Virus record (IMG/VR): IMGVR_UViG_3300043464_001630
Location: 1-64,000 of that record
Length of the DNA: 64,000 bases
Strand: one strand, 5' to 3'
Shown here: positions 6,782 through 62,148 of the stretch, piece by piece
Layout of the letters: each line of letters begins with the position of its first letter
Numbering within the stretch: position 1 is the first letter of the stretch
Notes under the pieces: generated by a model
What the model was told of the DNA's origin: nothing
What the model saw: the letters and a program-made list of their open reading frames with translations, nothing else
Databases searched by the model: none
Position numbers and translations under genes: made by a program

Positions 6782-6994
6782 ATGTACCCAATCCACAGAA
6801 TCGACGAAGCACATCTCTACCGTGTTTTTAAAAATAACGGAATGCGTGTATTAGATTTTCTGGTATATTTCAGTCATCCAATCGTCCGCCGAAATTTCGG
6901 TCTCGAAAATGTTGACAGAGAAGACGGTCTTATTATTTTCGAAATAAACGATCAGAAGAAGTTCTTTTTAAAGTGTATAAAGTATGGATTCTAG
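6782..6994 (+). CDS. Small protein, C-terminal KYG family
   Basis: ends EINDQKKFFLKCIKYGF. Confidence 0.6.
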   Translation: MYPIHRIDEAHLYRVFKNNGMRVLDFLVYFSHPIVRRNFGLENVDREDGLIIFEINDQKKFFLKCIKYGF

Positions 6995-7123
6995 AAACTT
7001 TCAGTAACCACAACCCCACTGGTATATAGGTCTTGTTATGATTGGAATGTAATAACATAGAAATCCTGCTGAAAACTAGCCACACATATTAATTTATGTG
7101 TGGCTTTTCTGTTAAATAATAAC

Positions 7124-8395
7124 ATGAATCGTAGAGATTTCATTTACACTGGGCTTGTAGGTGGATTAGGATTATCAATGGGTGACATCCTAAAATTACA
7201 AGCAGAATCCTCCTTGACTCCTAAAGCTCAGTCTGTTATTCATATCTTTTTACCGGGGGGTGCGGCATCACATGAAACGTTTGATCCACATCCACTTGCT
7301 CCTTCTGAGTATAGAGGCCCATTAAAAGCTATTCCTACTTCAGTAGTAGGACTACAATTCTCTGAATACTTACAGAAAACGGCAAAAATTGCAGATAAGC
7401 TCACAGTAGTACATTCCATGACACACGGAGAAGCCGCACACGAACGTGGGGTTACTTCTATGTTCACTGGCTATCGTCCATCTCCAGCATTAGAATATCC
7501 ATCATTTGGTTCTGTAATATCTAATCAATTAGGAGATAGAAATAATCTACCAGCATATGTTTGTATTCCACAGAAGATTGGTAACAATGGTAACGATCCA
7601 GCAGATAGTGGGTACTTATCGAAAGCATACGGCCCTTTTAGTTTAGGTTCTGATCCCGCCAACCTTGGATTTAAGGTTCGTGATTTAAATGTAGAAGTAG
7701 GATCAGAACGATTCGAAAGACGTAAATCTATTTTAGACACAGTAGATAGTCATTTTCGTTATTTAGAATCTAGTGATAACTTAGCAGCAATGGATACTTT
7801 CTATCAAAAGGCATTTGATTTAATATCTTCGCCAAAAGCTAAAGAAGCGTTTGCCTTGGATAAAGAACCCCAAGTGATGCGTGAAGCATACGGAATGAAC
7901 CAAGCAGGTCAGAGATTGTTAATGGCTCGTAGATTAGTAGAAGCAGGTGTAAGATTTGTTTCCGTAACTTATGGTGGATGGGATATGCATTCGGGGATTG
8001 CCAACGGAATAGGTAAACAACTACCCTCATTTGATCAGGCTTATGCAACACTCATTAATGATTTAGATCAGAGAGGAATGTTAGATTCAACACTAGTTAT
8101 GATCTCTTCTGAATTTGGTAGAACTCCGAAGATTAACAAAGATGCAGGGCGTGATCATTGGCCTAGAGTATTCTCTGTAGTGTTTGCTGGTGGTGGTTTT
8201 AAACGTGGTTATGTTTACGGTTCTTCTGATGCCACAGGAAGTGATGTAGAAAGTAATCCATTAACAGTAGAAAACCTAGCGGCTACAATGTATAATCAAT
8301 TAGGTATTGATCCAGAAACAAAACTCATGGCGGCAGGTGGAAGACCATCAGCTATTGTAAAAGATGGTACTGTAGTTAAAGATTTGTTAGTATAA
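7124..8395 (+). CDS. DUF1501 family protein (Tat-exported, alkaline phosphatase/sulfatase-like)
   Basis: MNRRDFI Tat motif; IFLPGGAASHETFDP, ARRLVEAGVRFV, GWDMH, SEFGRTP, GRDHWP; likely start ATG 7124 after TAAATA. Confidence 0.9.
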   Translation: MNRRDFIYTGLVGGLGLSMGDILKLQAESSLTPKAQSVIHIFLPGGAASHETFDPHPLAPSEYRGPLKAIPTSVVGLQFSEYLQKTAKIADKLTVVHSMTHGEAAHERGVTSMFTGYRPSPALEYPSFGSVISNQLGDRNNLPAYVCIPQKIGNNGNDPADSGYLSKAYGPFSLGSDPANLGFKVRDLNVEVGSERFERRKSILDTVDSHFRYLESSDNLAAMDTFYQKAFDLISSPKAKEAFALDKEPQVMREAYGMNQAGQRLLMARRLVEAGVRFVSVTYGGWDMHSGIANGIGKQLPSFDQAYATLINDLDQRGMLDSTLVMISSEFGRTPKINKDAGRDHWPRVFSVVFAGGGFKRGYVYGSSDATGSDVESNPLTVENLAATMYNQLGIDPETKLMAAGGRPSAIVKDGTVVKDLLV

Positions 8396-8403
8396 ATATT
8401 CTA

Positions 8404-9162
8404 ATGAATGATGATGATTTAATATTTGAAGCTTATCAAAATATATACGAAAGTGTAACTTTCAGTGTAGATGGGGGTAATCTATTTAATGTCGATAACA
8501 TTAATAATATCAATGATCTTGGTACTGCATTGCTTTATGGAGACAGAGATATAAAGGGAAGTTCTATTACTGAATTTATTAAATCCAATTTATCCGAACA
8601 AGAGTTTGAAGAATGGAAAAATAATAAAATATATGAATTTATAACAATGGATGGTTCAGAATTTGAAGCAGCAGAAGGAAATATAAATTTTTATACAGTT
8701 GGATTTCCGGAAAAAATAATACCTAAAGTTATATCTTTTATTAAGTATTTTATAGGTGAATACAACTTCAAGCTAACTTCAGAACCATATAAGGAGAGAT
8801 CAAATTTACATGAATCTGATGTTATTAGATTCCCAGTTCAAATAGTAACAAACAAGGAATCCGAAAATATACCAGAAGTAAATTTATCTAATAGAAACGC
8901 ATCTATTATTTTAATTAATATATTAAAATATCCCGAATCTGTTTTAGAAGATCATCAAATAAATTCAAGAGAATTATTAATGAAAATAGAAAACATAGAA
9001 GACAACGAAAAAAAGTTAAAATCTTATGTAGTAAAAAACGTAAATGACCGATTTACGGTTCTTGGATTAAGTGAAGAAAGAATTAAACGAATTTTATTTG
9101 ATTTAAAAAAATTAGCTCAATACGCGGTTGATAATCATTTCACTTATATAAAATTCGGTTAA
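8404..9162 (+). CDS. MND-leader hypothetical protein
   Basis: MNDDDLIFEAYQNIYE; TAAATA upstream. Confidence 0.55.
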   Translation: MNDDDLIFEAYQNIYESVTFSVDGGNLFNVDNINNINDLGTALLYGDRDIKGSSITEFIKSNLSEQEFEEWKNNKIYEFITMDGSEFEAAEGNINFYTVGFPEKIIPKVISFIKYFIGEYNFKLTSEPYKERSNLHESDVIRFPVQIVTNKESENIPEVNLSNRNASIILINILKYPESVLEDHQINSRELLMKIENIEDNEKKLKSYVVKNVNDRFTVLGLSEERIKRILFDLKKLAQYAVDNHFTYIKFG

Positions 9163-9170
9163 ATAAAATA

Positions 9171-10173: not shown

Positions 10174-10776
10174 GTGAGACAAAATTATATTAAGATTTCT
10201 AAGCTAGCTAAAGATCTAGGAGTAACTAAACAAACTCTTTGGAACTGGAAATATGCTGGTGAAGTTGATTTTGTTAAAATAGGTGGGTTAAATTGTGTAA
10301 CTAAAGAAACATACAATAATCTATTAGGAATAGAAAACAAGAAAAAAGAATCTGTTGTGATTTATTGTAGGGTTTCTTCGACGGAAAATAAATCTAATAT
10401 AGAAACACAAAAACAAAGATTGTTAAATTATTGCAATGCAAAAGGTTACAAAGTATCTGATGTGATACAAGAGTTTGGTTCTGGTATCAACGATAAGAGA
10501 CCAAAACTCGAAAAATTATTAAAACAGCAAAATTTTACAAAACTAGTAGTAGAACATAAAGATCGTCTAACAAGAGTAGGATTTAATTATATCAATACAC
10601 TGCTAAACTTCAATCATATTGAGATTGAAGTAGTTAATTCTGTTGATGATGATAGAACTGATTTAATACAAGATTTCATATCAATTATTACATCTTATTG
10701 TGCTAGAATTTACGGCAACAGAAGATCAAAAAGAAAAACTGAACAATTAATAAAGGAGCTTGAATCCAATGAGTAG
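10174..10776 (+). CDS. tnpA: IS607 serine recombinase TnpA
   Basis: N-terminal HTH (LGVTKQTLWNW), IYCRVSS, GSGINDKR, VEHKDRLTR, DLIQDFISIITSYCARIYG. Confidence 0.93.
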   Translation: MRQNYIKISKLAKDLGVTKQTLWNWKYAGEVDFVKIGGLNCVTKETYNNLLGIENKKKESVVIYCRVSSTENKSNIETQKQRLLNYCNAKGYKVSDVIQEFGSGINDKRPKLEKLLKQQNFTKLVVEHKDRLTRVGFNYINTLLNFNHIEIEVVNSVDDDRTDLIQDFISIITSYCARIYGNRRSKRKTEQLIKELESNE

Positions 10777-12355
10777 ATGCACAAAGAGTTATTCTTTCTA
10801 CTCGAAAGATCTTAACATAGGCAAATTCAATCTCTTTTTGAAGAAAGCCGAAGCAGTCAGAGATTATAAGAATGCTTTATCTGTCGAAATTTCATCTAAT
10901 CTCTTGAAGTACACTGAAGTTTCTAAGTTTGATTTCCTTAAAATGTTTGGTACGAAAACTAATTATTTGAATCCTAGCTCATTAATGAGAGGAAACGAAA
11001 TACAAAAAGCTGTAGCGGATGTGTTTGAAGCTTATCAAAATAAAATAACACAAATTAAACAAAAAATGTCTTTCTTTGTTCAAAAAGGAAAAGAGGTAGA
11101 ATTTTACAAAAGAAACACAAAAAATAATAAAAAAGGTGATGTTAGAAGTTATGAAATAAAAACTAAAAATACTCCATTGACAAAAACAATCACATTTCTA
11201 TCTCGTTATGGTTCCGAAAACACACTAGATTATGTCAATAAAAGAGCGAATCAAAATGATGACAAACAAGATTTCTATAAGACACTAAAAATACATATTC
11301 AAAAGTTTGGCTTAGAAAGATTGTCGAAACTTGCTTACAGCAAAAGAACACAAGTTCTAAATAAGTATAATTATCCAATCACATTCACCTCTCTATCTTA
11401 TCGTTCTGCTCTTCAGACGAACGATCCTTTGATTCAAAATTCCAAGAACAAAACATTTTCAAATGGAACTATTTCAATACCAAGCTTTAATGGAAAACAT
11501 ATGTTTGTTCCGACTACATTCAATGTAAAACATCATGGTCATTTGAATCAATATAAATCAAAAGAGTATATAATTTGTATCGAACAAAAGCGAAAAAGAA
11601 TCAGACTGATTACTACAAAAGAAACAGAAGAAACTATTTCTCCAGAAGGAATAAATTATTTAGGTGTTGACACCAACGTCAAACATAATCTATTTGCTAC
11701 TTCAGATGGAATGAATATTGACATGGACAGAGATTTGTTTCATGGTTATATTGCTTTTCTAAAGAAATACCAAGACAAGAAAGAACATACTTCTGGAGAA
11801 GATCAACAATTTGAACTATGGCAAGAACGTGTTCAGTGTATGCTCAAAAAGAAAGCTAGAGAGTTAGTTGATGTGGCTATAGCTTCTGGTAAGAATCATA
11901 TCATCATGGAAGATCTTGGTAACTTTGGTAAATCTTACACTAAATCAGAAGAGTTCGAAGGATTCAAATATTCTAGATTAACACGATTACTCAATCTTTC
12001 TTCTCTAAACAAAATTGTTAAAGGCATTTGTAAGAAGCTTGGTGTTAGACTAACTCTCATTCCTTCTCATTATACATCTCAGTGGTGCTTTGACTGTGGA
12101 CACATAGACAAAGCTAACAGAACCACCCAAGAAATTTTCCAATGTGTTTGTTGCAATGTAACAGCAAATTCAGACTTTCATTCTTCACGAGCCATCCTTA
12201 GGATAGGTTCTTCAGACGTTCTGAAGAGCAATATGCTCGTGATGGATAAATCATTCGATTGGATTCCTAAGAAACTCTCAAAAGGTTTCATAAGAAAACA
12301 ATTGGAAGAAATAATTCCTAAAACAACTTTTCAGTTGAATTGTCAAACTTTATAG
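10760..12355 (+). CDS. tnpB: TnpB RNA-guided RuvC nuclease (long, 531 aa)
   Basis: LGVD (RuvC-I), IMEDL (RuvC-II), YTSQWCFDCGH...CVCC Zn ribbon, NSD (RuvC-III). Confidence 0.88.
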   Translation: MNPMSRCTKSYSFYSKDLNIGKFNLFLKKAEAVRDYKNALSVEISSNLLKYTEVSKFDFLKMFGTKTNYLNPSSLMRGNEIQKAVADVFEAYQNKITQIKQKMSFFVQKGKEVEFYKRNTKNNKKGDVRSYEIKTKNTPLTKTITFLSRYGSENTLDYVNKRANQNDDKQDFYKTLKIHIQKFGLERLSKLAYSKRTQVLNKYNYPITFTSLSYRSALQTNDPLIQNSKNKTFSNGTISIPSFNGKHMFVPTTFNVKHHGHLNQYKSKEYIICIEQKRKRIRLITTKETEETISPEGINYLGVDTNVKHNLFATSDGMNIDMDRDLFHGYIAFLKKYQDKKEHTSGEDQQFELWQERVQCMLKKKARELVDVAIASGKNHIIMEDLGNFGKSYTKSEEFEGFKYSRLTRLLNLSSLNKIVKGICKKLGVRLTLIPSHYTSQWCFDCGHIDKANRTTQEIFQCVCCNVTANSDFHSSRAILRIGSSDVLKSNMLVMDKSFDWIPKKLSKGFIRKQLEEIIPKTTFQLNCQTL

Positions 12356-16579: not shown

Positions 16580-17054
16580 ATGAATGAAACAGAATTCGAA
16601 CTTCCTTATGACATAGCTGCAAAGTGGATAAATTTTGGAGTAACAGAAATAATTTTTAGATTCGATTTAAAACCACCAAAAGGATATCCGAATTATCCTT
16701 ATTATTGCTTCGTTAAGAAAAATAACAATCGATACTTTAGAAAACATTTGGGATTCTCTTTTGGAAGAATAAAAGGAAATTTTAAATGTCTTAGAATTAA
16801 AATAACAGATTATAAAAAATTAATGGTTTTCCGATTGAAATATGACATCTGATAATATCAAACCGCCAACTTTACACGAATTGTCTGAGATATTTCACGA
16901 AAAAAAGTTAGGAACACCTTACGGTGATTACTATATACCAGAAAAATGGCACAATTTTTTGGAAGAATGTGGAATCATTCATGCTACTATGGAAAGAGTT
17001 AAAATAGTAGATAAACAAAAATACTTCTTAGCCAAAATCAAATACGGTTTTTAA
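16580..17054 (+). CDS. Two tandem KYG-family small proteins (16580-16852, 16842-17054)
   Basis: end KITDYKKLMVFRLKYDI and KIVDKQKYFLAKIKYGF. Confidence 0.6.
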
Positions 17055-17068: not shown

Positions 17069-17998
17069 ATGAACTATTCATTTGGTTGTGAGCCAGACAG
17101 TCACGATGAACGTGATTATCGTTTAAAGTCTGTTTTAGATCCTGTCTTTAAAGATTCTGTGGATCTAACTCACGATCCACAAACCAGATGGTGGATTGGT
17201 GAAGCGCACGATCAAGGTACATTGGGATCATGTACAGCATTTGCCACAAATGACATGGTTCGTTATGTTCGTTATAAGACGAAACTATCTAGTTGGCCTA
17301 CTTCACAGTTGTTTACTTATTATGCAACTAGAAAATTACGCGGATCAACTGAGGAAGATTCTGGAGCTACTGCCAGAGAAGCACTAAAAGCTACTGTTGA
17401 TTATGGTGTTACTAAGAACGAATTATGGCCGTATGACATAGCTAAGTTCAAAGAAGAACCACCTAAAGAAGCATGGGTTGATGCAGAAAAGCATCAGTCT
17501 CTTTCTTATTTTCGTTTAGATCAAACTGAAGATGATATAATTGGATGTTTATCCGATGGATATCCATTTATCTTTGGAATGAAGATATATCAATCTTTCT
17601 TTAATTATAAAGAATCAGCTATGTTTGATGTAGTAATGCCATTTCCAAAACCCACAAAAGAAAAGTATTATGGTGGGCATTGTATGTTAGCAGTAGGTTA
17701 CTACAAACAAAACGGAAAATACATTATTATAATCAGAAATTCTTGGGGAGTTGAGTTTTGTAGCTCTGGATATATCCATGCTCCTCTGGATTTGTTATTA
17801 GATTCTAATTTCTGTTTTGATTTGTGGACGCTTCGTACTTCAGAAGACGAAAGACCAAAACAGGAACCGATCAAGCCAACAGTCTTTGTAGAACCACCAC
17901 TACCTCCAGAACCTGTTGTTCCGTTGTGGAAAAGTAAGAACTTCTATTTCTTGCTTGGATTTGGAGTTCTTGTGCTTCTCTTTTTGTTGTTGAAGTAA
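17069..17998 (+). CDS. Papain-like C1A cysteine protease with C-terminal membrane anchor
   Basis: QGTLGSCT, GGHCM, IRNSWG; Pro-rich linker then hydrophobic C-terminus. Confidence 0.88.
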   Translation: MNYSFGCEPDSHDERDYRLKSVLDPVFKDSVDLTHDPQTRWWIGEAHDQGTLGSCTAFATNDMVRYVRYKTKLSSWPTSQLFTYYATRKLRGSTEEDSGATAREALKATVDYGVTKNELWPYDIAKFKEEPPKEAWVDAEKHQSLSYFRLDQTEDDIIGCLSDGYPFIFGMKIYQSFFNYKESAMFDVVMPFPKPTKEKYYGGHCMLAVGYYKQNGKYIIIIRNSWGVEFCSSGYIHAPLDLLLDSNFCFDLWTLRTSEDERPKQEPIKPTVFVEPPLPPEPVVPLWKSKNFYFLLGFGVLVLLFLLLK

Positions 17999-18040: not shown

Positions 18041-18815
18041 ATGGAATCCATGCACAGAAACGAAGCTGTCATTGTCGAGAAAGATGGAAGGAAGTACGCA
18101 TTTTTGCCTCTTACCATATTTAACGACATGCCGATAAAGGACAGAGACGAGAAAATTTTAGAACAATTTGGTCTCAAAGATTTGATTTGTAGTAAATCTC
18201 TGTACGAAATCGTTGACGAAAAGAAGCTAATGTTAGCTAAAATCAAATATGAAATTTAATCACGAATGGTTTAGCGAAAGAACGGAAAATTTCTGCTTTT
18301 GGTTATTCGAACTTTTTGTGAATTTTCTTATTTTCTTTATGAAGATAACTGCTAAAATAATGCTCTTCATTTTAGCATGTCAAATGATTTACGTGTTTTT
18401 TAAATGGTGATGGAACTAGAAACAATACAAATTACAGATGAAACCTTAAAAAGATTACATCGCCTTGGCGTGGTAAATTGGTTTGAACTGGGTTTACGAT
18501 TTTCTGAAAAGAATACTTGGAAAGGTGAGTTTTGGATTTTGGATGTAACGAACAAAGAGAAATACTTTTTGGCAAAAATACATTATGGATTTTAAAATCA
18601 ACAAAAGACTTAGAATAAAGATTAACGTTAATAAGTTACTCGAACTGAAAAACGAAACAAATTACGAATATCTTTATCAGTTTTTATCGGAATTTTGTAA
18701 AAATTCGGGCTTGAAAAGAACTTCCGTTCAATTCAAAAACGGCAAGCGACTTTACTATTTCCAAATCCTAGACAAGCATAAATACTTTCTAGCTAAAATT
18801 AATTATGGAATCTGA
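18041..18815 (+). CDS. Three KYG-family small proteins (18041-18259, 18404-18595, 18585-18815)
   Basis: end LMLAKIKYEI, YFLAKIHYGF, YFLAKINYGI. Confidence 0.6.
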
Positions 18816-20743: not shown

Positions 20744-21046
20744 ATGAGTAGCAGACAAGTGATTCTAAACAAAAGTGAAGTTGTGAATTTGTTTTCTAAA
20801 CTAGAAACTGATCACAAATTCAATAACATGGACGAATATATAAATCACATGAAAAATGTTCATGGTTTGTCTCCTTATAAAAAAGATATCAGAAAATGTG
20901 TATACACTTTTTATGGATTAGGAGAAGGCGAAAACAAAATGAATCATTATTCTATCAAGAAAGAAGGTTTATTCACAGAAAGATATCGCTATTATATTGT
21001 TAATAAACAAAAATGGTTTCTCACTAAAATTAATTACGGATTATGA
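20744..21046 (+). CDS. KYG-family small protein
   Basis: ends IVNKQKWFLTKINYGL. Confidence 0.6.
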   Translation: MSSRQVILNKSEVVNLFSKLETDHKFNNMDEYINHMKNVHGLSPYKKDIRKCVYTFYGLGEGENKMNHYSIKKEGLFTERYRYYIVNKQKWFLTKINYGL

Positions 21047-21423: not shown

Positions 21424-21741
21424 GTGAACTTGAAAGATCCAGAAAATACCACACTATTAGTAGTAGGTTGGAATATTGACAGAATTATTTTAAATCTAAA
21501 AACATCTCCGTATCCTGCTGTTTCTTTAAGAAAAATCGGATTAAAGAGTTTAAATTTTAGAAAAAGAAAGCCAAAATTCAAATCAGACATCGCAGTTTCT
21601 TATTTAAAACAAAGAAACGAGGTATTAGATCTTCGAGTAACTACTGATAAAAACGATCCGCTTTACGAATGGTGGTACACAGTCTATGAGATAACAGACA
21701 AACCTAAATTCTTCTTAGCAAGAATTAAACTTGGTTTTTAG
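21424..21741 (+). CDS. KYG-family small protein
   Basis: ends EITDKPKFFLARIKLGF. Confidence 0.6.
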   Translation: MNLKDPENTTLLVVGWNIDRIILNLKTSPYPAVSLRKIGLKSLNFRKRKPKFKSDIAVSYLKQRNEVLDLRVTTDKNDPLYEWWYTVYEITDKPKFFLARIKLGF

Positions 21742-23111: not shown

Positions 23112-23360
23112 TTGGACATTTTTCATATGACAAAAGAAAACACGGTAGTTATCAGAATGGAGAATTTCGATAAGGCTTATAGGAAGTTTTTGATCAACTA
23201 CAGAATCCACCGTTCTACGAAGCAAGTAACGCCTGTAGCGTTCGAGACATACCTTGGCATAGTCCATGTAGCGGATTGGAGAAATGAGGACGTTTTTCGT
23301 GAATATAGAATCGCCAATAAAGAACGGTTCGATTACGGCAAAGTTAAATTCGGATTGTGA
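23112..23360 (+). CDS. Divergent KYG-family small protein
   Basis: ends RIANKERFDYGKVKFGL. Confidence 0.5.
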   Translation: MDIFHMTKENTVVIRMENFDKAYRKFLINYRIHRSTKQVTPVAFETYLGIVHVADWRNEDVFREYRIANKERFDYGKVKFGL

Positions 23361-23437: not shown

Positions 23438-23466
23438 TTGACATAGTTATTTTAATAATGTATAAT
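23438..23466 (+). promoter_or_regulatory. Perfect consensus sigma70 promoter before very AT-rich ORF 23486
   Basis: TTGACA-N17-TATAAT with TG extension. Confidence 0.8.
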
Positions 23467-23752: not shown

Positions 23753-24192
23753 ATGTTTGTAAGACTTACAGAAAAAAGTTTGCTGAAAATGATCGAAGTT
23801 TATTCTAGTGATGAAGCTTTAGGAATAAAATATGATTGCGGAGTTGAACATTATGAAATAATCGACGAGAAAGTGTTCTTTTTGGCAGTGATTACTCACG
23901 AACTAGAATTCAGCGAAATTTATTACGAATCTAGAAGATGGAAACCGATTAATTCTTAAAAATGTTTATTAAGCTCACCTACAGAGGGCTTTGGGCAATG
24001 GTGAAAACGAACAGAAGTCCAGCAGCATTTGGACTGGAGTATGACAATGAAATTTTACATTACAAAGTTGTTGACGAGCCGTTGTTTTTCTTATCTGTTC
24101 TTAAACTCGATATAGAGTTCGATGTAGTAACCAAAGAATCCAGAGCAGCAGTTCAGCGAGAAATTCTCGAACAATTTTATAGACAAACCTAA
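23753..24192 (+). CDS. Two KYG-family proteins, extended subtype (23753-23959, 23962-24192)
   Basis: MF(V/I)(R/K)LT...IIDEKVFFLAVITHELEF / VVDEPLFFLSVLKLDIEF. Confidence 0.6.
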
Positions 24193-35243: not shown

Positions 35244-36633
35244 ATGAAATGTAAAATATCTACAAATATTGTTAGAGAAAGATTGATGCCTTGGTACAAG
35301 CAACAAGTAGATGCGTGTAATATGACATGGGAGGCACTAGAACCTCTTACTAATAAATTAGGATTGAGTTATATTAATTGTGTGATAGTGGACGGAAAAT
35401 ATAATGATGAATATTTTTTGTTTAGAATTATAGACAAAGAACTATTCTTTCTTGCGGCAATTAGCCATGGCATTGCATTCGTGGAGGCATGACAAAAAAA
35501 TTTCATGTAGATAGAAAAAGTTCTAAAGAACCCGCAGGTTTTGTCCGATTATAGTATACGCCAGTTAAAAATTGATAAAGAATTGCACAAAAAAATCAAG
35601 TGTAATCATGACAACTACAAAAACTACTTACAAAGTAAAGAACCTTGTTGATGGTTGGACTTCCCTGCCTCATACTACTCTGGAAGAAGCTCAGACTGAT
35701 CTTGTGCGTTTGCGGGATCGTGTTGGCATGATGGAATGGAAGACCAGACCACCACACAATTATGTAGTGGTGATGGAAGTTGTCACAACCAAACAAACCA
35801 TAATCGAGTAGGTCTGAGTGACAAGTGATTGAATAGATGTATAAAAACATGTTTATTAGAATTACTGATTGGGGTAATGGTTCTCATTCGCTCTTTAGTT
35901 CTCAACTTGGTTTAAGAATGATCGAGCCTATTTGTTTAGATAATGCTCATAATTATATTATAATAAATAAACCTCTATTCATGCTATCAGTGATCAAATA
36001 TGGTATAAGGTTTGATGAAGTATGAGAATATTGATTGATTCTACACATTACTATGCTAGAGCAGGATCATGTTATGGTGTACAGTACGATGATAAAACAG
36101 GCGCATTTTACCATGTTACGAATGGACCAATTTTAGAAGAAAACACTGACATTCCCAGTACACTTGGATTAAAGCATCTCGAAACAGATGCAAGGCTTAA
36201 TTATATATTTGAAGTAATTAATAAAAAGCTATTCTTTCTATCTGTGTTTAAATATGGTTTAGAGTTCGAATTAATAAATGAAGAAAGAGATGATTGTTGA
36301 TATACGAAAATGGGGTTCAGCAGAACTGCTCGATATTCCCTCATGGGAGTTTGGGCTTGTCGTCCCTAAGTTTAAAACATCAGTTTATGTATGGGAAGTA
36401 TTTGATAAAAAGTTATTCTTTTTAATGGTAATCAAATATGGTATACAATTCGAGGAAGTATGAAGATACACATAACCGATTTCGGAGATTGTCTTTTATG
36501 GATTATTGATGCGGAAGAAATTGGATTGAATTCGCCTCCATATATAGATGCAAAGTTTGAGGTAATAGATGAGAAAAAGTTCTTCCTATCAGTAATCAAA
36601 TATGGTATAAAATACGAGGAAGCATTAAATTAA
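35244..36633 (+). CDS. Cluster of KYG-family proteins: 35244-35492, 35837-36025, 36022-36300, 36278-36463, 36460-36633 (last not in ORF track)
   Basis: All end (I/V)x(D/N)xxxF(F/M)Lxx(I/F)(K/S)(Y/H)G(I/L)x(F/Y); 36460 translates MKIHITD...EVIDEKKFFLSVIKYGIKYEEALN. Confidence 0.65.
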
Positions 36634-36766: not shown

Positions 36767-37977
36767 GTTTTAAAATTCTCTATATAAAGAGAAAAAAAAT
36801 TACACAATCAACAACAATTAAGTAATATTAAAAAATATGAGTAACAAAATATATGTAGAAATCGGTCAAGATTCCAAAGAACTATACTTGATGTATAAAA
36901 ATTTCTGCGAATCCAATCAAATTAAAATCAAGACTCAAAAACATTTCGATTCTGAAGACGAAGAAATGGAAAAGAAATTCTGCGAGAAATTTGGAAGTAC
37001 TGAAGAAGCAGACGAGAAGATGTTTGAAATGCACGGGGTGAAATATGGAACATCATATAATCATCCTCTCGATGAATATAGATGGATCACTGCATTTGAA
37101 GTAGTGAACAAGGAAGCCTTTGAAAAGACTCCTTGTTATGAATACTTGAAGAAGAAACAATATGATGGCGATGATGTCTATATTACGGAGAAAAGAGTAC
37201 AGAACAGAAAGCACTCTTTCAAACAACGAGTAGATGCTTTTTTCGGAGATGACTAAAGAATGAATAAATGCTCCATGTAAGGAGAAAAAGATGTTGACAG
37301 CACAAAGCCAGTGTCCTATCATAAACACATGAAAACAAAAAAGCGTTACGTTGATTCGGGAAGAATATTCGAATACAAATCAAAGTATATGAATGATGAT
37401 CCTAATCATATTCTGTCTGTATTCAAAAACTTCCTTGAAGAAATGAAGGAATTTAAAAAGATTAAGAACCTTGTTTATGGTATAAAGTATCAATCAAACT
37501 ATACTCGCGTATTAGAATCTGATGAGGTATACGAAAAAAGAGTAGCCGAATATAAAGAAGAATTGGCTAAAAAGCGGATTGTTCTAGAAGAACAGGCAAA
37601 AGAAATGGGCTTGAAGCTCAAGCCAGTAAAGGATGTTGTTCCTAGAAGAGAATATGTTGTGGTGCGCTATCCAGATCTGCCAAGTGATGTTCCTTTCAAG
37701 ACATTCTGCGAAAACATAATCAATCATTTAGAAAAGCACTGGGACATTGATACAGAAGAACATTATCTTACGATGAACTTCTTTATTGAATTCAACGGTC
37801 AGAGACTAGAAAATGATTATGAATTCAACAGACGGGTGTATCACGAACGACTCGAAAATACCAAGCTCAAGCGCACAGAAAAGGAAAACAAGCTCAGAGA
37901 ACTCAAATCTCTGGCAAGACAGATGGGCGTGGAATTGGTTAAGGCATAAACAAAAATGTTCGATGTAGGGAGAAAAG

Positions 37978-38250
37978 ATGAACATTGCATTGTATAAACT
38001 AGGAGATTATATGTGGTCTTCTCCTCGTCTTTCTGAAGATTTGGGAGTAATCATGGAACACATCGTACCAGAAGATACACGATCTCCTTGTTATTCTCGT
38101 GTTTGTGATAAACAAAAATTCTTTCTTGCCGTGGTAAAGTATGGAATAGTCTTTAAAGAGTTATCTGATGATGATATGGAAAGAATGAAAGCGGATTATC
38201 TACAAGAATCTGCGAGAAGGCGTAATTTCTTTTATGCTTCGTGGATATAA
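37978..38250 (+). CDS. KYG-family small protein
   Basis: RVCDKQKFFLAVVKYGIVF. Confidence 0.6.
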   Translation: MNIALYKLGDYMWSSPRLSEDLGVIMEHIVPEDTRSPCYSRVCDKQKFFLAVVKYGIVFKELSDDDMERMKADYLQESARRRNFFYASWI

Positions 38251-39301: not shown

Positions 39302-39509
39302 TTGATATATAATAGAGGATCTACTATTATACTTAAATACGATTAATAACTACTAATAGACAATCCTCTATTAATAAACTAGCTACAATAAGTCTGATTC
39401 TTGTATAATCACTCTTAATAAATACAGAAAACCGCTCCACTTTTAGACAAAAAGTCCGGACTAGAGACAACGGATTGTCTAGTATCGTGATAAGTATTAA
39501 ATAGTAATC

Positions 39510-40124: not shown

Positions 40125-40319
40125 ATGAATATAGTCTTATGGAAAGCTGAATGGAAAAGCCCGCATGTTACAAGTTTGGAAATAGGAATTAGATATAATT
40201 CTGAAATTACTAAAAGATTTAAATTAAAAAATGTCTCGATTTATGAAATAATTGATGAGCAACTATTCATGTTAGCAGTCATCAAGCACAATATAGACTT
40301 TGAGAAGGTAGAGTTATAG
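40125..40319 (+). CDS. KYG-family small protein
   Basis: EIIDEQLFMLAVIKHNIDF. Confidence 0.6.
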   Translation: MNIVLWKAEWKSPHVTSLEIGIRYNSEITKRFKLKNVSIYEIIDEQLFMLAVIKHNIDFEKVEL

Positions 40320-42163: not shown

Positions 42164-42430
42164 ATGAATAACCTTATTGATCCTCTCAAAATTATCAAAT
42201 CCACGAATGGCAAGTTCTTCAGTATCTCTTATACTAATAAGAAGGGAGAGACGAAAGATTACATTTGTCGTATAGGCGTAAAGAAGCACCTGCGTGGAGG
42301 CGAAAAGTACTTTGTGCCCGATAGTGTTACTGTTTATTCTGTTACTAATAGTAATAAAGGATACAAGACATTTGTAAGAGAACAAATAAACAGTATTAAA
42401 GTGGGTACTACCCTGTGGAGTGGAGTGTAA
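42164..42430 (+). CDS. Small SH3/WYL-like phage protein
   Basis: GKFFSISYTNKKGE...RIGVKKHLRGG. Confidence 0.45.
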   Translation: MNNLIDPLKIIKSTNGKFFSISYTNKKGETKDYICRIGVKKHLRGGEKYFVPDSVTVYSVTNSNKGYKTFVREQINSIKVGTTLWSGV

Positions 42431-42465
42431 AGGTAATTTGTCAGGGTCACCTCTCTTCTCTCCTT

Positions 42466-46670: not shown

Positions 46671-47740
46671 ATTTATTTTCATTTATTTTTAACCTGTGTA
46701 AATCGTTGAGAATCATTAACTTACGAAGTTTTCGCGTTTAAAGGCGATTCTAGGGGGGTTTCTACCGTGTCAGCTATGATCACCCTACCGGCAATAGAAA
46801 GGGGATCAGAACGGGATTCTTGGCGATTCCAGAGTGGGTTCCTGTATTAGGTTCCGGTGAGCTTTTTCCCTACCGGCGAACCCTACCGACGAACCGTTGA
46901 AAACTTTTTTGCTAGTGTAACTTTCGGAAATATAGGGACTTATAAAATTATTTAAAAAAAGAGCTTAAGGGATTTGCCATTTCGTTCGAATACTAGGGTA
47001 GGTCAGCGAGATTCCGCTGGCTTGGCCGCGAGAGGCAAGGGAAGTCTCCGCTAGGGCTGGAACCTATGGTTACCAGAGTTGATGGTGCTCTCTGAAGAGG
47101 CTCGCAGAGGAATGTCCGATAGAATACGGGACGGTTCCGGTTGCTCAGGCTAGTACCCTGAGTGGCTACCAGCGAAGGTACACAGTATTTGTGGGGTTTG
47201 TCGCCAGCGTTTTACGGTTACCGAGATAGGGAATCCGAGAATAGAGCGTTGGCAATCAAACACTAATTAAGATTATGAAAATAACAAATGCCGTTTCCGC
47301 CGCTAATTCTAGTGATTTTGTTTATTCGGAAAATGTTAGGTACGTTTTTATCTGTAAAATGATCGAATCCCGAATCTCTTCACGACTTTTTCTGATTGAT
47401 GATTCGAAAGAACAAAAGTTACAGGATATAATTAATGGCGATTGGCGCAAAACCTTGGGATGTATTGATGAGCAGATTAAAAATCTAGAAAAAGAGCGGA
47501 TTCCTTTGGAGAAATGGCTCCGCGACAACGGAGCAAACGACGACGATTTAGACCATAGTTTGTGGTGCGACGACACAGATTGGAGAGCATGGGTAAATGA
47601 GGATTAGGTATTGTGTTCAGCCCCTTACACAATTCGGTGTAGGGGGCGCGGTTATAAGTGTTTTGCTTTCAGCCTTTTGTCAGTCCCGCTGTAGGGCACT
47701 GAGTTCACAAAGGGTTGAATAACAGTACACTAATTAAATT

Positions 47741-49273: not shown

Positions 49274-50160
49274 CCTTCAGAGTTGCGGCTCAGGGGAGTT
49301 CAATCCTCTCCTGAGCCCTTCGCGTTTAAATGCCCTTTAAAAGGCTCCACCCCCTTCGTCAGTATCTCCACCGCCCCCCGCCCCCTATAGGCCATTAGAA
49401 ACCCCCGTAGCGTTCCGCCATTAGGGGATCATGATTGTCCCCTCAGTTCCGTTCACACAATAAACTCACGTTGGTAATAGATTCGCGTTCACATTACACA
49501 CTCAACCCACTCTAATAAACTCATGAGAGACACACACTTCCCTAACTTTGTTCACCTTATCCTTTCCAATAATCCTTCAGCCTATGCCAAGCAAGTGCTT
49601 ATTAGAGAGTCTAGTCTGTACTACAGAGACTTCTATTCCTCTTGCTACGTCCTGACTCTGGACGAAAAAGACTTCGCCATTAACAGAGCGGTGGAAAGGT
49701 TCTCTGAGTATGTAAACCTTTCGAAATCAACGCTAGACTCACTGGACGCGGTTAAGACTGCTGTCGCTCAGGTGCTTCAAGAATCTTATACTGAGTCTAT
49801 TCAAAGAACTTTCAAAGCTAAGGGGTTGGCTATGGTATAGGCGACCTCTCCTAATACGGGGCTCCCTTTTTCGGAAGGGGGTTCCCGTTTCAGGAAGCGT
49901 GCCACCTAGCGAAAAAGAAAGTTTTATTTTCTACTAAAGTTTTTGGGAGAACGGGGCTCTTCTATGCAGGTCGAGCATTTTAATTTGCGGCTTGCGTAAG
50001 TTGCATGACTGGTCGGGTGAGGGGGCATTGCCAAAATTTTTTTTGCAAATTTCTGGAAATTTTACTAAAGGCGATTTTTTAATATACAATCCTCTATTAT
50101 TTCCAGATCTTTTTTTGATATTTTAATTTTATATTTTTGTTGAGTAAAATATACGAAATT

Positions 50161-54243: not shown

Positions 54244-55608
54244 ATGGCTGACTGTGGAAATCATAACAACGAATACAGAACCCGTAGAGATTTCCTGAAT
54301 AATTTCGGATGGGGTATAGGAGGATTATCTTTAGCATCTATCTTGGGTGTAGATCCCGTAACTGCTGAAGCAGTTTCTCCTCTTGCCGCTAAAGCTTCAC
54401 ACTTTCCAGTTAAAGCAAAAGCAGTTATTCAACTATTTGCTTCTGGTGCTCCGTCTCATGTAGATACTTTTGATTATAAACCAGAACTTCAAAAGCGTGA
54501 TGGACAAAAAGGAGATTATGGTAATCTTCTCGCTTCTCCGTTCAACTTTCCCCAGTTTGGAAAATCTGGTTTACATATATCTGAAGTTTGGTCGAAATTA
54601 GGCCAACATGCGGATAATATGGCAATCATAAATTCCATGCAAACAGACGTTCCTGATCATGGAATTGCTGCAAAAATGTTTAATACAGGTTCTACACAAC
54701 TTCCAAAACCAAGTCTGGGTAGTTGGTTAACCTATGGTTTAGGTTCCTTGAACCAAAACATGCCAGCTTTTATATCTTTAAACGGTGCGCCAGAATGGAG
54801 ACAGTGTGCATTCTTGCCGGGGATGTTTCAAGGCTGTAATGTGCAATACAGAACTGGTATGAGAGCAGAAGAGATTCTTTCTAATATCCGAAGTGAATTC
54901 TCTTCTTTAGATCGCCAAAGACGCCAAATTGACTTTTCTAAGTTTTTGAATTATGATCACATGAGTAAGTTGCAAAAAGATACGCAACTAGAAGCCAGAA
55001 TTGAATCTTTCGAAACCGCATTTAAAATGCAAACCGAAGCAACAGATGCTTTTGATGTCTCTAAAGAACCAGAGAACATTAAAGATCTATATGGTCGTAA
55101 CGAAGAAGGTAATAAAATGATAGTGGCTCGTCGTTTGGTTGAGCGTGGAGTACGTTTTGTACAGGTTAATGTGGGTGGCTATGATCATCATAGTGATATC
55201 AAAACCGCCATGACGAATACCACAATGCGTTACGACACAGCTTTTAGTGGATTACTAACTGATCTTAAACAACGAGGGTTGTTAGATTCTACACTAGTTA
55301 TTTGGGGTGGTGAATTTGGACGTACTGTGACCGCTGGAGGAGGTGCTGGTGCTCCGGGTCGTGATCATAATGGTAAAGCATTTTCAGTATGGATGGCAGG
55401 AGGAAACATTAAAGGCGGACAGCGTTACGGAGAAACCGACGAAACCGGCGGAAGATCGGTTAAAGATATTGTACATATTCATGATTTACATGCGACGATT
55501 CTTCATTTAATGGGATTTGATCACACGAAATTAACTTACAATTACAACGGAAGAGAGTTCCGTCTCACTGATAACTTCGGAAACGTTATAAAAGAACTTA
55601 TTAGTTAA
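54244..55608 (+). CDS. DUF1501 family protein (second copy, Tat-exported)
   Basis: TRRDFL; GAPSHVDTFDYKP, ARRLVERGVRFVQ, GEFGRT, GRDHN, DLHATILHLMGFDH. Confidence 0.92.
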   Translation: MADCGNHNNEYRTRRDFLNNFGWGIGGLSLASILGVDPVTAEAVSPLAAKASHFPVKAKAVIQLFASGAPSHVDTFDYKPELQKRDGQKGDYGNLLASPFNFPQFGKSGLHISEVWSKLGQHADNMAIINSMQTDVPDHGIAAKMFNTGSTQLPKPSLGSWLTYGLGSLNQNMPAFISLNGAPEWRQCAFLPGMFQGCNVQYRTGMRAEEILSNIRSEFSSLDRQRRQIDFSKFLNYDHMSKLQKDTQLEARIESFETAFKMQTEATDAFDVSKEPENIKDLYGRNEEGNKMIVARRLVERGVRFVQVNVGGYDHHSDIKTAMTNTTMRYDTAFSGLLTDLKQRGLLDSTLVIWGGEFGRTVTAGGGAGAPGRDHNGKAFSVWMAGGNIKGGQRYGETDETGGRSVKDIVHIHDLHATILHLMGFDHTKLTYNYNGREFRLTDNFGNVIKELIS

Positions 55609-60443: not shown

Positions 60444-60451
60444 ATAATTAC

Positions 60452-61084
60452 ATGAGAAAATACTGGGGGTCGGAGGAAAACGAGGAAGAATCTTTAAGAG
60501 AATTACCACAATCGTTACCGACTTCGGATCTATTGCTTCCTGCTGGATCTATCAAAGTATTAGATAATAGTATACAATTCTATGCAGAAATCTCTGGTTC
60601 TACTTGTAGCGAACTGAATCGTTTACTCAGAGAACTAGATACCCGAATGCAACATGCTAAGATCACTATGAACGACAGTTCTTTTGATCCAGTAATTCAT
60701 TTAAGAATGCACAGTTACGGAGGAGATGTATTGGCTGGATTAGCATCAGTAGATACAATCAGAAGCCTCAAGACAAAAGTATATACATACGTAGAGGGTG
60801 CTGCTGCAAGTGCCGCTACAATCATCAGTATTGCTGGTAAAAAGCGTCACATAGGAAAGAATAGCTTTATGCTTATTCATCAATTAAGTTCAGTCTGTGC
60901 TGGAACTTTTGAACGTTTAGAAGACGAACAAGAAAACAATCGTAGAATGATGAATACTATCAAATCTTTGTATAAAGAATACACAAAGATTCCTATGAAA
61001 GAATTAGATAATATTCTAAAGCGTGATATCTGGTTTGATGCCGCTACTTGCTTAAAGTACGGATTAGTGGATGAAGTGTTGTAA
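60452..61084 (+). CDS. ClpP-like protease
   Basis: SYGGDV, AASAAT, MLIHQ, DIWFDA...YGLVDEV. Confidence 0.85.
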   Translation: MRKYWGSEENEEESLRELPQSLPTSDLLLPAGSIKVLDNSIQFYAEISGSTCSELNRLLRELDTRMQHAKITMNDSSFDPVIHLRMHSYGGDVLAGLASVDTIRSLKTKVYTYVEGAAASAATIISIAGKKRHIGKNSFMLIHQLSSVCAGTFERLEDEQENNRRMMNTIKSLYKEYTKIPMKELDNILKRDIWFDAATCLKYGLVDEVL

Positions 61085-61123
61085 TTTTCTTTACAAATAT
61101 ATCGTAGCTGATATCATGTAAAA

Positions 61124-61948
61124 ATGATCTCAGCTAAAATCATTGCCGATTCAGTTTGTTCCGAAAGTACATCAAAGCGTATTACTTCTTTCGTATTAAC
61201 ATATCCACGATTCATTCATGCGGAACTGCTTACGCATCGAGCACTTACAAGGAATGCGGCGAGTTCCAGAGCAATCCCCGTCTCTAAATTCATTGAAGAT
61301 GTATTAACCGATCCAGCAATGCCTGTACATTGGGGAGCTAACCAAAAAGGAATGCAAGCCGATAATGAAGTAAGCGAAGAAGCCAAAACCAAAGCAATGA
61401 TGATTTGGAACTCCGCTAGAGACGCAGCAGTCGAACATGCAAAACAATTAAACGAACTTGGTTTACATAAACAAGTAGTTAATCGTATTATGGAACCGTT
61501 CTTTCATATTACTACTTTGTTAACTGCTACTGAATTCAAGAACTTCTTTAAGCTACGAGCACATAAAGCTGCTCAACCAGAAATTAGAGAATTAGCATAT
61601 AAAATGTTAGAGTTATACGAATCTAACAAACCAGTAGAGAAAGGAATTGGTGAATGGCATATTCCATTTGGAGACAAATATCTAGATGGTCTGAGTACTC
61701 GACAAAAGTTAAAGATCGCAACAGCAAGAGCAGCTAGAGTTTCTTATAAGAATTTTGATGGAGTAGTAGATTATGATAAAGATTACAGTCTACATGATGA
61801 TTTAGTAAAAGAAGGACATTGGAGTCCATTCGAACATTCTGCAATTTGTGATTTTGGTGTTCATGATAATTTTGATGGATGGCGTTCTTATAGAAATATT
61901 CTTTCTAAACAAAACTGGAGTGAAGAAGCATGGCAACAAATAAAGTAG
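61124..61948 (+). CDS. thyX: Flavin-dependent thymidylate synthase
   Basis: RFIHAELLTHR, NAASSRAIP, NFFKLR...AQPEIR, ARVSY, HWSPFEH. Confidence 0.88.
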   Translation: MISAKIIADSVCSESTSKRITSFVLTYPRFIHAELLTHRALTRNAASSRAIPVSKFIEDVLTDPAMPVHWGANQKGMQADNEVSEEAKTKAMMIWNSARDAAVEHAKQLNELGLHKQVVNRIMEPFFHITTLLTATEFKNFFKLRAHKAAQPEIRELAYKMLELYESNKPVEKGIGEWHIPFGDKYLDGLSTRQKLKIATARAARVSYKNFDGVVDYDKDYSLHDDLVKEGHWSPFEHSAICDFGVHDNFDGWRSYRNILSKQNWSEEAWQQIK

Positions 61949-62148
61949 TTCTTTCGTTCTATAAACAATACGAACCCGCAATGGTTCAAAGTTTGGGTAA
62001 TTCTTCACCTAAATTAGAATATTCATTTAATGAAGAATTAGGATTAAAAGTAATAAATGTACATGAAATGGGTCATGACGATTATTGCGAGTTCGAAATT
62101 GTTGATGAAAAGCTTTGGATGTTAGCAGTTGTTAAATATGGCTTCTAA
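61930..62148 (+). CDS. KYG-family small protein
   Basis: ends EIVDEKLWMLAVVKYGF. Confidence 0.6.
   Translation: MATNKVVLSFYKQYEPAMVQSLGNSSPKLEYSFNEELGLKVINVHEMGHDDYCEFEIVDEKLWMLAVVKYGF

What the first reader, a model, noticed from the sequence alone, without database searches (positions are those of the whole stretch)
6782..62148. About 19 small paralogs with hypervariable N-termini and a constant C-terminal (I/V)xDKxxFFLxxIKYG module
Seen: 6782, 16580, 16842, 18041, 18404, 18585, 20744, 21424, 23112, 23753, 23962, 35244, 35837, 36022, 36278, 36460, 37978, 40125 and 61930 (57-105 aa). All are on the + strand and often in stop/start-overlapping tandem arrays. Two subtypes exist: ending at YG(F/I/L), or extended by IxFEEV with an N-terminal M(F)IxIT strand. 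I do not recognise the family. Inference: a common docking or oligomerisation module with diversified specificity regions, e.g. an adaptor repertoire or anti-defence family under expansion.
Basis: partly seen in the sequence, partly recalled or inferred. Interest (0 to 1): 0.8.

Follow-up and report, generated by a model that had tools for sequence, protein, structure and literature searches.

The report
Mini-protein family arrayed in lake jumbo phages
The 19 small genes are real, anciently duplicated members of a large, unnamed family of single-domain mini-proteins found only in uncultured freshwater jumbo phages; their function is unknown, most likely a set of small binders used during host takeover.

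Summary
All 19 + strand ORFs share the motif and there are exactly 19. A profile built only from an unrelated contig recovers 17. The other two (16580, 23112) are divergent but supported. The window is the first 64 kb of a 236-kb lake phage contig. The family matches nothing in Pfam, PHROGs, NCBIfam, PADLOC, PDB or 50,697 deposited phage genomes. It has at least 591 clusters (≤50% identity) in metagenomes, always in same-strand clusters, up to about 22 consecutive genes in 4.8 kb.

AlphaFold models of both subtypes (pLDDT 88) show one compact domain. The "constant C-terminal module" is strand β3 plus the central helix (plus β4 in subtype B). No significant structural neighbour exists.

The N-termini differ between paralogs but are conserved between orthologs (dN/dS about 0.24, module about 0.09). 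Paralogs are at most 50% identical, so the family is old, not expanding or hypervariable. A new detail: the next gene's ATG often lies inside the conserved Tyr-Gly codons (11-nt overlap).

Function is inferred only. I favour a repertoire of small intracellular binders for host takeover or counter-defence. Expression could not be tested.

The parts
6782..6994 (+). Subtype A member (70 aa), solitary, upstream of a DUF1501 gene
   Evidence: Ortholog P0098 is 81% identical.
16580..16852 (+). Divergent subtype A member (90 aa, ends KYDI). Its Tyr codon supplies the ATG of the next member (11-nt overlap).
   Evidence: Recovered at E 3e-4 by a profile lacking it and its orthologs, and hhalign gives 93.5%. 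Ortholog is 91% identical.
16842..17054 (+). Subtype A member (70 aa), followed by a papain-like peptidase gene
   Evidence: Orthologs P0013-15. Synteny is kept in L001 and L002.
18041..18259 (+). Subtype A member (72 aa, ends KYEI). A 53-aa ORF starts at the embedded ATG (-11).
18404..18595 (+). Subtype A member (63 aa). The next member starts at the embedded ATG (-11).
18585..18815 (+). Subtype A member (76 aa), the one modelled. A 149-aa ORF starts at the embedded ATG (-11).
   Evidence: AF2 model: pLDDT 87.9, pTM 0.72, order beta-alpha-alpha-[GL]-beta-beta-alpha. Ortholog P0001 is 95% identical.
20744..21046 (+). Subtype A member (100 aa), with an ATGA overlap to the next ORF
   Evidence: Ortholog P0019 is 96% identical.
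21424..21741 (+). Subtype A member (105 aa, GTG start, ends KLGF). A TTG sits at the -11 position.
   Evidence: Ortholog P0024 is 87% identical.
23112..23360 (+). Most divergent subtype A member (ends KVKFGL). The true start is probably the ATG at 23127 (77 aa).
   Evidence: E 2e-3 with a profile lacking it and its orthologs, and hhalign gives 77.8%. Orthologs P0028, P0031 and P0034 start MTKEN.
23753..23959 (+). Subtype B member (68 aa) with a short C-terminal tail
   Evidence: Its nearest paralog is its neighbour 23962.
23962..24192 (+). Subtype B member (76 aa) with a C-terminal tail
35244..35492 (+). Subtype B member (82 aa) with a longer N-terminal insert
35837..36025 (+). Subtype B member (62 aa; possibly starts at 35849, MFIRIT), with an ATGA overlap to the next member
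   Evidence: Ortholog P0049.
36022..36300 (+). Subtype B member (92 aa)
   Evidence: Ortholog P0051 is 81% identical.
36278..36463 (+). Subtype B member (61 aa; possibly starts at 36290, which would give an 11-nt overlap), the one modelled
   Evidence: AF2 model: pLDDT 88.4, pTM 0.72, order beta-alpha-beta-beta-alpha-beta. Ortholog P0003 is 95% identical.
36460..36633 (+). Subtype B member (57 aa), the shortest; starts in the ATGA overlap
37978..38250 (+). Subtype B member (90 aa) with a 30-aa charged C-terminal tail
   Evidence: Ortholog P0066 is 84% identical.
40125..40319 (+). Subtype B member (64 aa), solitary
61930..62148 (+). Subtype A member (72 aa, acidic), solitary; overlaps the upstream gene's end by 19 nt
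   Evidence: The ortholog sits at the same place in L004 and L005.
23438..23466 (+). Perfect sigma-70-type promoter consensus ahead of the 23486/23753/23962 operon (tentative)
   Evidence: Consensus match only.
37294..37322 (+). Sigma-70-type promoter-like site (11 of 12) ahead of the 37311/37978 operon (tentative)
   Evidence: Consensus match only.

Best explanation
Shown here:
- The 19 ORFs belong to one phage-restricted family of single-domain mini-proteins.
- The fold is a minimal alpha/beta sandwich. Subtype B has the complete order beta1-alpha1-beta2-beta3-alpha2-beta4 in 57-62 residues. Subtype A has a longer two-helix insert after beta1 and stops after alpha2.
- The conserved 'module' is beta3 plus the central helix alpha2 (and beta4 in B). 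The variable N-terminal part is beta1, the helical insert, an invariant Gly-Leu turn and beta2 of the same domain.
- The genes arose by old tandem duplication. They sit in the flexible, small-gene, same-strand regions of a lineage of freshwater jumbo phages.
- They are packed for coupled translation, with the next ATG inside the conserved Tyr-Gly codons or in an ATGA overlap.
- Each paralog is kept individually under purifying selection across related phages.

Inferred, not shown: each paralog uses its own variable surface (insert and loops, with net charge from -11 to +12) on the shared scaffold to bind a different host or phage macromolecule early in infection. That would make the family a repertoire of small binders or inhibitors for host takeover or counter-defence. 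Neighbours possibly act as homo- or heterodimers, since ferredoxin-like domains often pair through their sheets and natural two-module fusions exist.
For: - Family real and phage-only. The profile separates the 19 from everything else. There are 591 clusters at E <= 1e-3, all 37-150 aa. No relative appears in one genome each of 185,579 cellular species with the subtype-B pattern. The nearest ESM Atlas clusters are 97-100% viral.
- Single compact domain: two confident AF2 models.
- Core-like conservation of the helix.
- Old paralogs with conserved orthologs.
- Tandem origin: the nearest paralog is the physical neighbour in 7 of 19 cases against 2.0 expected, p = 0.005.
- Coupling. In the window the -11 junction occurs at 4 subtype-A members with ATG and one with TTG. 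In other loci it occurs at 10 of 25 subtype-A genes. It also shows in the N-terminal tetrapeptide of 44 of 95 subtype-A homologs against 2 of 95 subtype-B.
- Arrays elsewhere: about 22 members in 4.8 kb (L011/L012), 5 genes carrying 6 modules in 1.4 kb (L009), and 2-8 modules per contig in 9 more lake contigs.
- Flexible regions. Related phages share backbone genes at 50-80% identity but differ in the complement and order of members.
- Early-type setting. The surrounding genes are same-strand small ORFs among nucleotide-metabolism and repair genes. Sigma-70-like promoters are enriched on the + strand (6 against 1.7 expected), and two lie directly ahead of member operons.
- Diverse charge.
- Fusions P0045 and P0050 recur in two or more assemblies.
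Against: - No functional evidence of any kind exists.
- No RNA run could be listed, so even transcription is untested.
- The host is unknown and there is no Shine-Dalgarno signal to score.
- There is no homology or significant structural similarity to any known takeover or anti-defence protein.
- Old, conserved paralogs are not the signature of a fast arms race.
- The early-gene assignment rests on context and consensus promoters only.
- The dimer idea rests on fusions that could be indel products, and no multimer model could be run.
Confidence: 0.4

Rival explanations
1. Docking-module model. The conserved beta3-helix segment binds one common partner, such as a host protease, polymerase or phage assembly. 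The variable half recruits different clients, making the family an adaptor repertoire.
For: Polar residues D3, K13 and Y14 of the module are 82-92% conserved in both subtypes, and K6 and K11 are 91-94% conserved in subtype A. That is more than a folding core strictly needs. Every helix position is conserved. The variable halves differ widely in charge.
Against: Both AF2 models put the segment in the middle of one small domain rather than in a separable module. The helix has two hydrophobic stripes, as a buried helix would. Subtypes A and B differ at positions 6 and 11 (K versus L, K/R versus V), so a single common surface is not conserved across the family.
Confidence: 0.2
2. Small nucleic-acid-binding regulators. 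The fold resembles winged-helix, PheRS-B1, KH or RRM-type domains, and the members modulate transcription or RNA fate at different sites.
For: The weak structural neighbours of subtype A are winged-helix regulators (PadR, HxlR, MarR, RTP), KH and RRM domains. The top Atlas structural match is the PheRS beta-subunit B1 domain at TM 0.62. Subtype A is mostly basic, with median pI 9.0.
Against: No match is significant (best E 0.017, TM <= 0.5 in Foldseek). Subtype B lacks the two-helix insert and is mildly acidic (median pI 5.7). Charges in the family range from -11 to +12. The helix that would be the recognition helix is acidic or hydrophobic in the sequences read (for example ...FLEECGI...FDKECGL).
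Confidence: 0.15
3. Subunits of a hetero-oligomeric phage structure, such as virion-internal or ejected proteins or an intracellular scaffold, made in fixed ratios from coupled neighbouring genes.
For: Translational coupling through overlapping junctions is family-wide. Natural two-module fusions exist. Neighbour pairs are kept in synteny, for example 16580/16842 in L001 and L002.
Against: The members lie among early-type small genes and nucleotide-metabolism genes, not structural modules. Complement and order vary between related phages, which is unusual for parts of one structure.
Confidence: 0.12
4. Chance ORFs, or decaying duplicates without function.
For: No expression data could be obtained. 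One member in L011 is split by a frameshift.
Against: dN/dS is 0.09-0.24 between orthologs. There are hundreds of conserved clusters and confident folds. ORFs of 57-105 codons are maintained in a 32% GC genome.
Confidence: 0.03

Closest known systems
Tandem arrays of paralogous genes in jumbo phages G and 121Q (Hua et al. 2017, PMC5646251; cited in the jumbo-phage review PMC13282480)
   Same: Long same-strand tandem arrays of small paralogs of unknown function in phages over 200 kb, interpreted as tandem duplication. The accordion idea for large phages is reviewed in PMC13359090.
   Different: [quoted passage not shown] Here the paralogs are at most 50% identical, are conserved one-to-one between related phages, and are scattered in five clusters. 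No sequence relationship was found: tblastn of four members against 50,697 phage records gave nothing. I did not check that the G and 121Q genomes are among those records.
T4-type internal proteins (variable small proteins sharing a short capsid-targeting sequence). This is from my own knowledge; the literature query failed.
   Same: The concept of a short constant element plus diverse remainder, encoded by neighbouring small genes in a plastic region. At least one such protein acts against a host defence.
   Different: There the constant element is an N-terminal targeting peptide that is cleaved off. Here it is the central strand and helix of the fold, at or near the C-terminus. No PHROG or Pfam hit was found. 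A Foldseek match to an Ip6-like protein was insignificant (E 0.5).
Ferredoxin-like (beta-alpha-beta-beta-alpha-beta) small domains: ACT, HMA, RRM, PII-like, procarboxypeptidase pro-domain
   Same: The order of secondary-structure elements in the subtype-B model is the same. All the weak Foldseek neighbours are of this class.
   Different: No significant match was found (best E 0.13 in PDB, 0.08 in BFVD; TM <= 0.6). Alpha1 is reduced to two short turns. Subtype A lacks beta4. None of those families' ligand or metal motifs is present.
Winged-helix-like domains, including the PheRS beta-subunit B1 domain
   Same: Subtype A has strand, two helices and a beta-hairpin in the order of a winged-helix core. 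The Atlas structural match is TM 0.62, and Foldseek lists PadR, HxlR, MarR and RTP.
   Different: All matches are insignificant. The N-terminal helix of the canonical fold is missing. The family-conserved part is the hairpin strand plus an extra C-terminal helix, not the helix-turn-helix. Subtype B has no such helices.

Membership tests
Any curated protein family (Pfam-A, PHROGs v4, NCBIfam 20, PADLOC 2) | Profile match at or near the curated threshold | tested here: not met
   Ten members per library were scanned. Nothing relevant appeared even at E <= 0.1-1.
Any protein with a solved structure | Sequence-profile or fold match that is significant | tested here: not met
   Profile against PDB sequences: best E 0.73. 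Foldseek PDB: best E 0.13 for subtype B and 0.017 for subtype A, TM <= 0.6. BFVD: best E 0.08.
Ferredoxin-like fold class | beta-alpha-beta-beta-alpha-beta order of elements | tested here: met
   Met for subtype B: E5-11, H15-19/H22-25, E27-34, E36-41, H44-54, E57-60 at pLDDT 88. Subtype A lacks the last strand. This rests on predicted models only. Sheet order was not inspected because no coordinates were available.
Ferredoxin-like fold class | Significant superposition on a known member | tested here: not met
   TM 0.41-0.60 and E >= 0.13.
Winged helix-turn-helix DNA binders | Helix-turn-helix with a basic or polar recognition helix, followed by a beta-hairpin wing | tested here: inconclusive
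   Element order is compatible in subtype A, with weak matches. The candidate recognition helix is acidic or hydrophobic in the sequences read. The insert is absent from subtype B.
T4-type internal proteins | N-terminal capsid-targeting sequence shared by otherwise unrelated proteins | tested here: not met
   The shared element is C-terminal or central, and the N-termini are paralog-specific. No PHROG hit was found.
Tandem paralog arrays of phages G and 121Q | Tandem same-strand array of paralogs in a jumbo phage | tested here: met
   The window has five clusters, the largest with four back-to-back genes. L011 has about 22 consecutive members.
Tandem paralog arrays of phages G and 121Q | Members very similar to one another (recent duplication) and homologous to those arrays | tested here: not met
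   Paralogs are at most 50% identical. No tblastn hit was found in the phage collection.
C-terminal amphipathic membrane-targeting helix (MinD/FtsA type) | Terminal helix with one hydrophobic face, free of the folded domain | tested here: not met
   The helix has two hydrophobic stripes. It is modelled as packed in the domain at pLDDT about 90. In subtype B it is followed by a strand.
Known anti-defence proteins (anti-CRISPR, sponge proteins, DNA mimics) | Homology to a characterised member, or demonstrated inhibition of a defence system | not testable with these tools
   No homology was found. Activity needs experiments, and the host is unknown.

The most novel reading that the evidence does not exclude
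The arrays encode a combinatorial system. Translationally coupled neighbours, and the natural two-module fusions, pair through their sheets into many different heterodimers. That would give the phage a large library of binding surfaces from a few dozen 60-residue genes. It would be a phage-encoded, germline 'binder repertoire' on the smallest known ferredoxin-like scaffold, aimed at variable host defence or surface-maintenance proteins.
Probability: 0.12. Interest if true: 0.85.

Novelty: new variant of a known kind. Interest (0 to 1): 0.55.

Why it matters
Large phages are full of small genes of unknown function, and this family is among the more conspicuous examples. It has at least 591 distinct clusters, 19 copies in 64 kb here and about 22 in 4.8 kb elsewhere, yet no name in any curated library and no representative in any deposited phage genome.

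It offers four things:
- a well-defined family, with profile, two subtypes and two confident models, that could be added to Pfam or PHROGs;
- a very small, apparently stable alpha/beta scaffold of 57-61 residues that tolerates large surface and insert variation, which is of interest for structural biology and binder design;
- a clear case where paralog arrays in a jumbo phage are old and individually conserved rather than recent accordion products;
- a neat example of a protein motif (Tyr-Gly) that doubles as the start codon of the next gene.

What the proteins do remains open. An answer would bear on how freshwater jumbo phages take over their hosts.

Tried and rejected
- Single-sequence tblastn of four members against 50,697 phage records gave no real hit.
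- The search for related loci with the 19-member alignment failed for lack of a conserved 7-10-column stretch. Subtype alignments A2 and A3 worked.
- Exact consensus DNA patterns in IMG/VR found only this contig.
- Cellular genomes had no relative (only the subtype-B pattern was scanned).
- An RNA run search listed none. Laying DNA contigs showed presence in several lakes but no informative variation.
- Shine-Dalgarno inspection found no signal for any gene in this genome, so it is uninformative.
- DNA repeat search found no long exact repeats, so recent gene conversion or a recombination-cassette idea was dropped.
- A diversity-generating or hypervariation idea was rejected on ortholog conservation and population identity.
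- The C-terminal helix as a membrane-targeting helix, or a C-terminal Y-x-F-type tag, was considered and rejected. The helix is packed in the models, and subtype B continues beyond it.
- ESM Atlas gave only viral hypothetical clusters and held no model of a fusion protein.
- Literature searches found no description of the family or the phage lineage. One query failed on a too-short term.
- The neighbour-similarity test in the L011 array was not significant.

Full report
**What is there**

The window is low in G+C (about 0.28-0.40, with a richer stretch at 42-50 kb) and densely packed with + strand ORFs. Translating the 19 coordinates gives proteins of 57-105 aa. All carry the motif (I/V)-x-D-(K/E)-x-x-(F/Y/W)-(F/M)-L-x-x-I-K-Y-G at or near the C-terminus.

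A (L/F/I)-G-(L/I) turn lies 15-30 residues upstream, and its Gly is invariant in 78 subtype-A sequences.

A profile of the 19 separates them (43-76 bits) from all other six-frame segments (next best 6.7 bits), so the count of 19 is exact for this window.

That test is circular, so I built a profile only from an unrelated metagenomic array (L011). It recovers 17 of the 19 at E <= 6e-4, with a shuffled control best of 6.7 bits. The two that fail, 16580 and 23112, are the most divergent. A subtype-A profile that excludes them and their orthologs recovers them at E 3e-4 and 2e-3, and profile-profile comparison gives 93.5% and 77.8%.

Ten members are subtype A and end at Y-G-(F/I/L). Nine are subtype B and continue with x-(F/Y)-x-E-(V/I), sometimes with a tail.

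**Where it comes from**

The window is positions 1-64000 of IMG/VR contig UViG_3300043464_001630, which is 236,391 bp. It is a jumbo phage-like genome from lake water. Pieces of the same genotype occur at low depth in independent lake metagenomes dated 2016 to 2024.

The window also encodes the following:
- ribonucleotide reductase
- a helicase
- UvdE
- a papain-like peptidase
- DUF932
- a metallophosphatase
- a TnpB-like protein
- two DUF1501 proteins

It has no tRNA and no Rfam match, and no near-identical deposited phage.

**How big the family is**

No member hits Pfam, PHROGs, NCBIfam or PADLOC. Four members used as tblastn queries find nothing real in 50,697 deposited phage genomes.

An exhaustive profile search of 1.84 billion representative proteins finds 591 clusters at E <= 0.001. 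All are 37-150 aa, and a few contain two modules. Both subtypes are common, 95 and 95 among 190 collected.

The subtype-B pattern finds no relative in one genome each of 185,579 cellular species. The nearest ESM Atlas clusters are viral. The family is therefore large, phage-restricted as far as tested, and confined so far to uncultured freshwater sequences.

**Genomic habit**

Wherever flanks are available the family occurs in same-strand clusters:
- six members within 3.2 kb in L008
- five genes carrying six modules in 1.4 kb in L009
- two to eight modules in each of nine further lake contigs
- about 22 consecutive members filling the whole 4.8-kb contig L011, assembled independently as L012

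Subtypes A and B are interleaved. Most carriers are relatives of the window's phage, with backbone genes 50-80% identical. Their complement and order of family members differ, so the family lives in the flexible parts of the genome. A second jumbo contig (L007, 242,607 bp) shares only the family with the window.

**A coupling device built into the motif**

In subtype A the Tyr-Gly codons (TAT GGn) contain an ATG. In the window the next ORF starts exactly there, with an 11-nt overlap, after 16580, 18041, 18404 and 18585. After 21424 a TTG sits at the same place, where Tyr is replaced by Leu. Subtype B members ending E-E-V use GTA TGA, an ATGA overlap.

In 15 other loci, 10 of 25 subtype-A genes have the -11 junction and 4 have -4. 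Twelve of 60 subtype-B genes have -4.

The junction forces the next protein to begin M-(E/D/A/G/V)-(F/S/Y)-(K/N/S/R/D/E). Forty-four of 95 subtype-A homologs from many samples begin that way, against 2 of 95 subtype-B and about 1% by chance. Head-to-tail A-to-A arrays with coupled translation are therefore a family-wide habit.

**Structure**

AlphaFold2 gives confident models for both subtypes.
- The 61-aa subtype-B member (36278) has pLDDT 88.4 and pTM 0.72. Its elements are strand 5-11, short helices 15-19 and 22-25, strands 27-34 and 36-41, helix 44-54 and strand 57-60. That is the ferredoxin-like order.
- The 76-aa subtype-A member (18585) has pLDDT 87.9 and pTM 0.72. It has strand 10-14, helices 15-23 and 30-41, the Gly-Leu turn, strands 43-51 and 54-61 and helix 64-74. 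This is the same core with a longer helical insert and no last strand.

The protein is therefore one compact domain.

Foldseek finds no significant neighbour in the PDB or BFVD. The best values are E 0.13, 0.08 and 0.017, with TM <= 0.6. The weak hits are ferredoxin-like domains for B and winged-helix, KH and RRM domains for A. The Atlas structural search gives the PheRS B1 domain at TM 0.62. A profile against PDB sequences finds nothing.

**What the conservation looks like**

In both subtypes every helix position is conserved. D3, K13, Y14 and G15 are shared. Position 6 is K in A and L in B, and position 11 is K/R in A and V in B.

On a helical wheel there are two hydrophobic stripes separated by lysines. 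That fits a helix sandwiched between the sheet and the first helices, so it is a folding core. The few conserved polar residues leave room for a common ligand but do not demand one.

**Evolution**

Paralogs within the window share only the module. Best matches are 16-63 residues at 21-56 bits, and identity is at most 50%. At DNA level the module is 60-74% identical with no long exact repeats.

By contrast, 13 of 19 have full-length orthologs at 59-96% identity elsewhere. Syntenic contigs carry an ortholog of each paralog.

For eight ortholog pairs between the window and L001, dN/dS is about 0.24 in the N-terminal parts (471 codons) and about 0.09 in the module (151 codons). dS is near saturation, so the values are approximate.

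The nearest paralog is the physical neighbour in 7 of 19 cases against 2.0 expected (p = 0.005). The family therefore arose by tandem duplication long ago. Each copy has since been kept for its own sake, with some birth and death between lineages. One member in L011 is frameshifted. It is neither hypervariable nor currently expanding in this genome.

**Function**

Nothing here tests function. No RNA run could be listed, and no gene in this genome shows a Shine-Dalgarno signal.

The context is of the early, accessory kind. Near-perfect sigma-70-type promoters are modestly enriched on the + strand (6 against 1.7 expected). Two lie directly ahead of operons with members, including a perfect consensus at 23438.

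Net charge ranges from -11 to +12. Subtype A has median pI 9.0 and subtype B 5.7. That argues against one uniform activity such as DNA mimicry or general nucleic-acid binding.

My best reading, at about 0.4, is a repertoire of small intracellular binders on one scaffold, each aimed at a different host or phage macromolecule during takeover or counter-defence. The rivals are:
- small nucleic-acid-binding regulators (0.15)
- subunits of a hetero-oligomeric structure (0.12)
- non-functional ORFs (0.03, contradicted by selection)

**Comparison with what is known**

Tandem arrays of paralogs in jumbo phages are on record. [quoted passage not shown] Reviews discuss accordion-like expansion in large phages (PMC13359090, PMC13282480).

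The present family differs in being unrelated in sequence, deeply diverged, individually conserved, and equipped with the Tyr-Gly/ATG junction. I therefore rate it a new variant of a known kind. It is a new protein family inside a known phenomenon, and its function is open.

Noticed in passing
window 38291-38725, 38735-39301, 39510-39971 (+): A second, unrelated paralog trio (144, 188 and 153 aa). All three begin MNDEELIWE and are preceded by a conserved upstream stretch, forming a 49-nt repeat family 78-84% identical (D2). One member hits phrog_8582 of unknown function. Homologs of 39510 occur in L016 and L019.
   Followed up: partly
window 39344-39375, 40420-40451, 40463-40494: A 32-nt intergenic direct repeat; two copies are 94% identical (D3). 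It could be a promoter, terminator or regulatory site.
   Followed up: no
window 7100-8395 and 54244-55608 (+): Two full-length DUF1501 (sulfatase-superfamily-like) genes in a phage genome (E 3e-114 and 8e-132). This is an unusual auxiliary gene, and the ortholog is conserved in the related contig L002.
   Followed up: no
window 10760-12355 (+); L001 4471-5712 (-): A TnpB/IS605 OrfB-like gene. In the related phage a copy sits at a different place, on the opposite strand between small-gene clusters. This suggests an active mobile element in this lineage.
   Followed up: no
window 42000-50000: A G+C-rich stretch (0.42-0.48 against about 0.32 elsewhere). It has few long ORFs before the helicase gene at 47741-49273, for example none of 45 aa or more in 46450-47274. 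It has no Rfam or tRNA match.
   Followed up: no
window 17069-17998 (+): A papain-family cysteine peptidase (Peptidase_C1, E 4e-14) sits immediately downstream of the 16580/16842 pair. The synteny is conserved in L001, L002 and an 82.7-kb contig.
   Followed up: partly
window 5596-6555 (-): A 319-aa minus-strand ORF with a weak C2H2 zinc-finger match at its N-terminus (E 2e-4, below the Pfam cut-off).
   Followed up: no
L007 3211-4221 and 8883-9971: The other jumbo contig carries two RNA ligase genes, AAA ATPases, a DUF2201 metallopeptidase/VWA protein and a GH46 chitosanase next to its family members.
   Followed up: no
whole window, upstream of starts: No Shine-Dalgarno-like sequence appears ahead of almost any gene, including well-annotated ones. 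This may hint at a host with weak Shine-Dalgarno usage.
   Followed up: no
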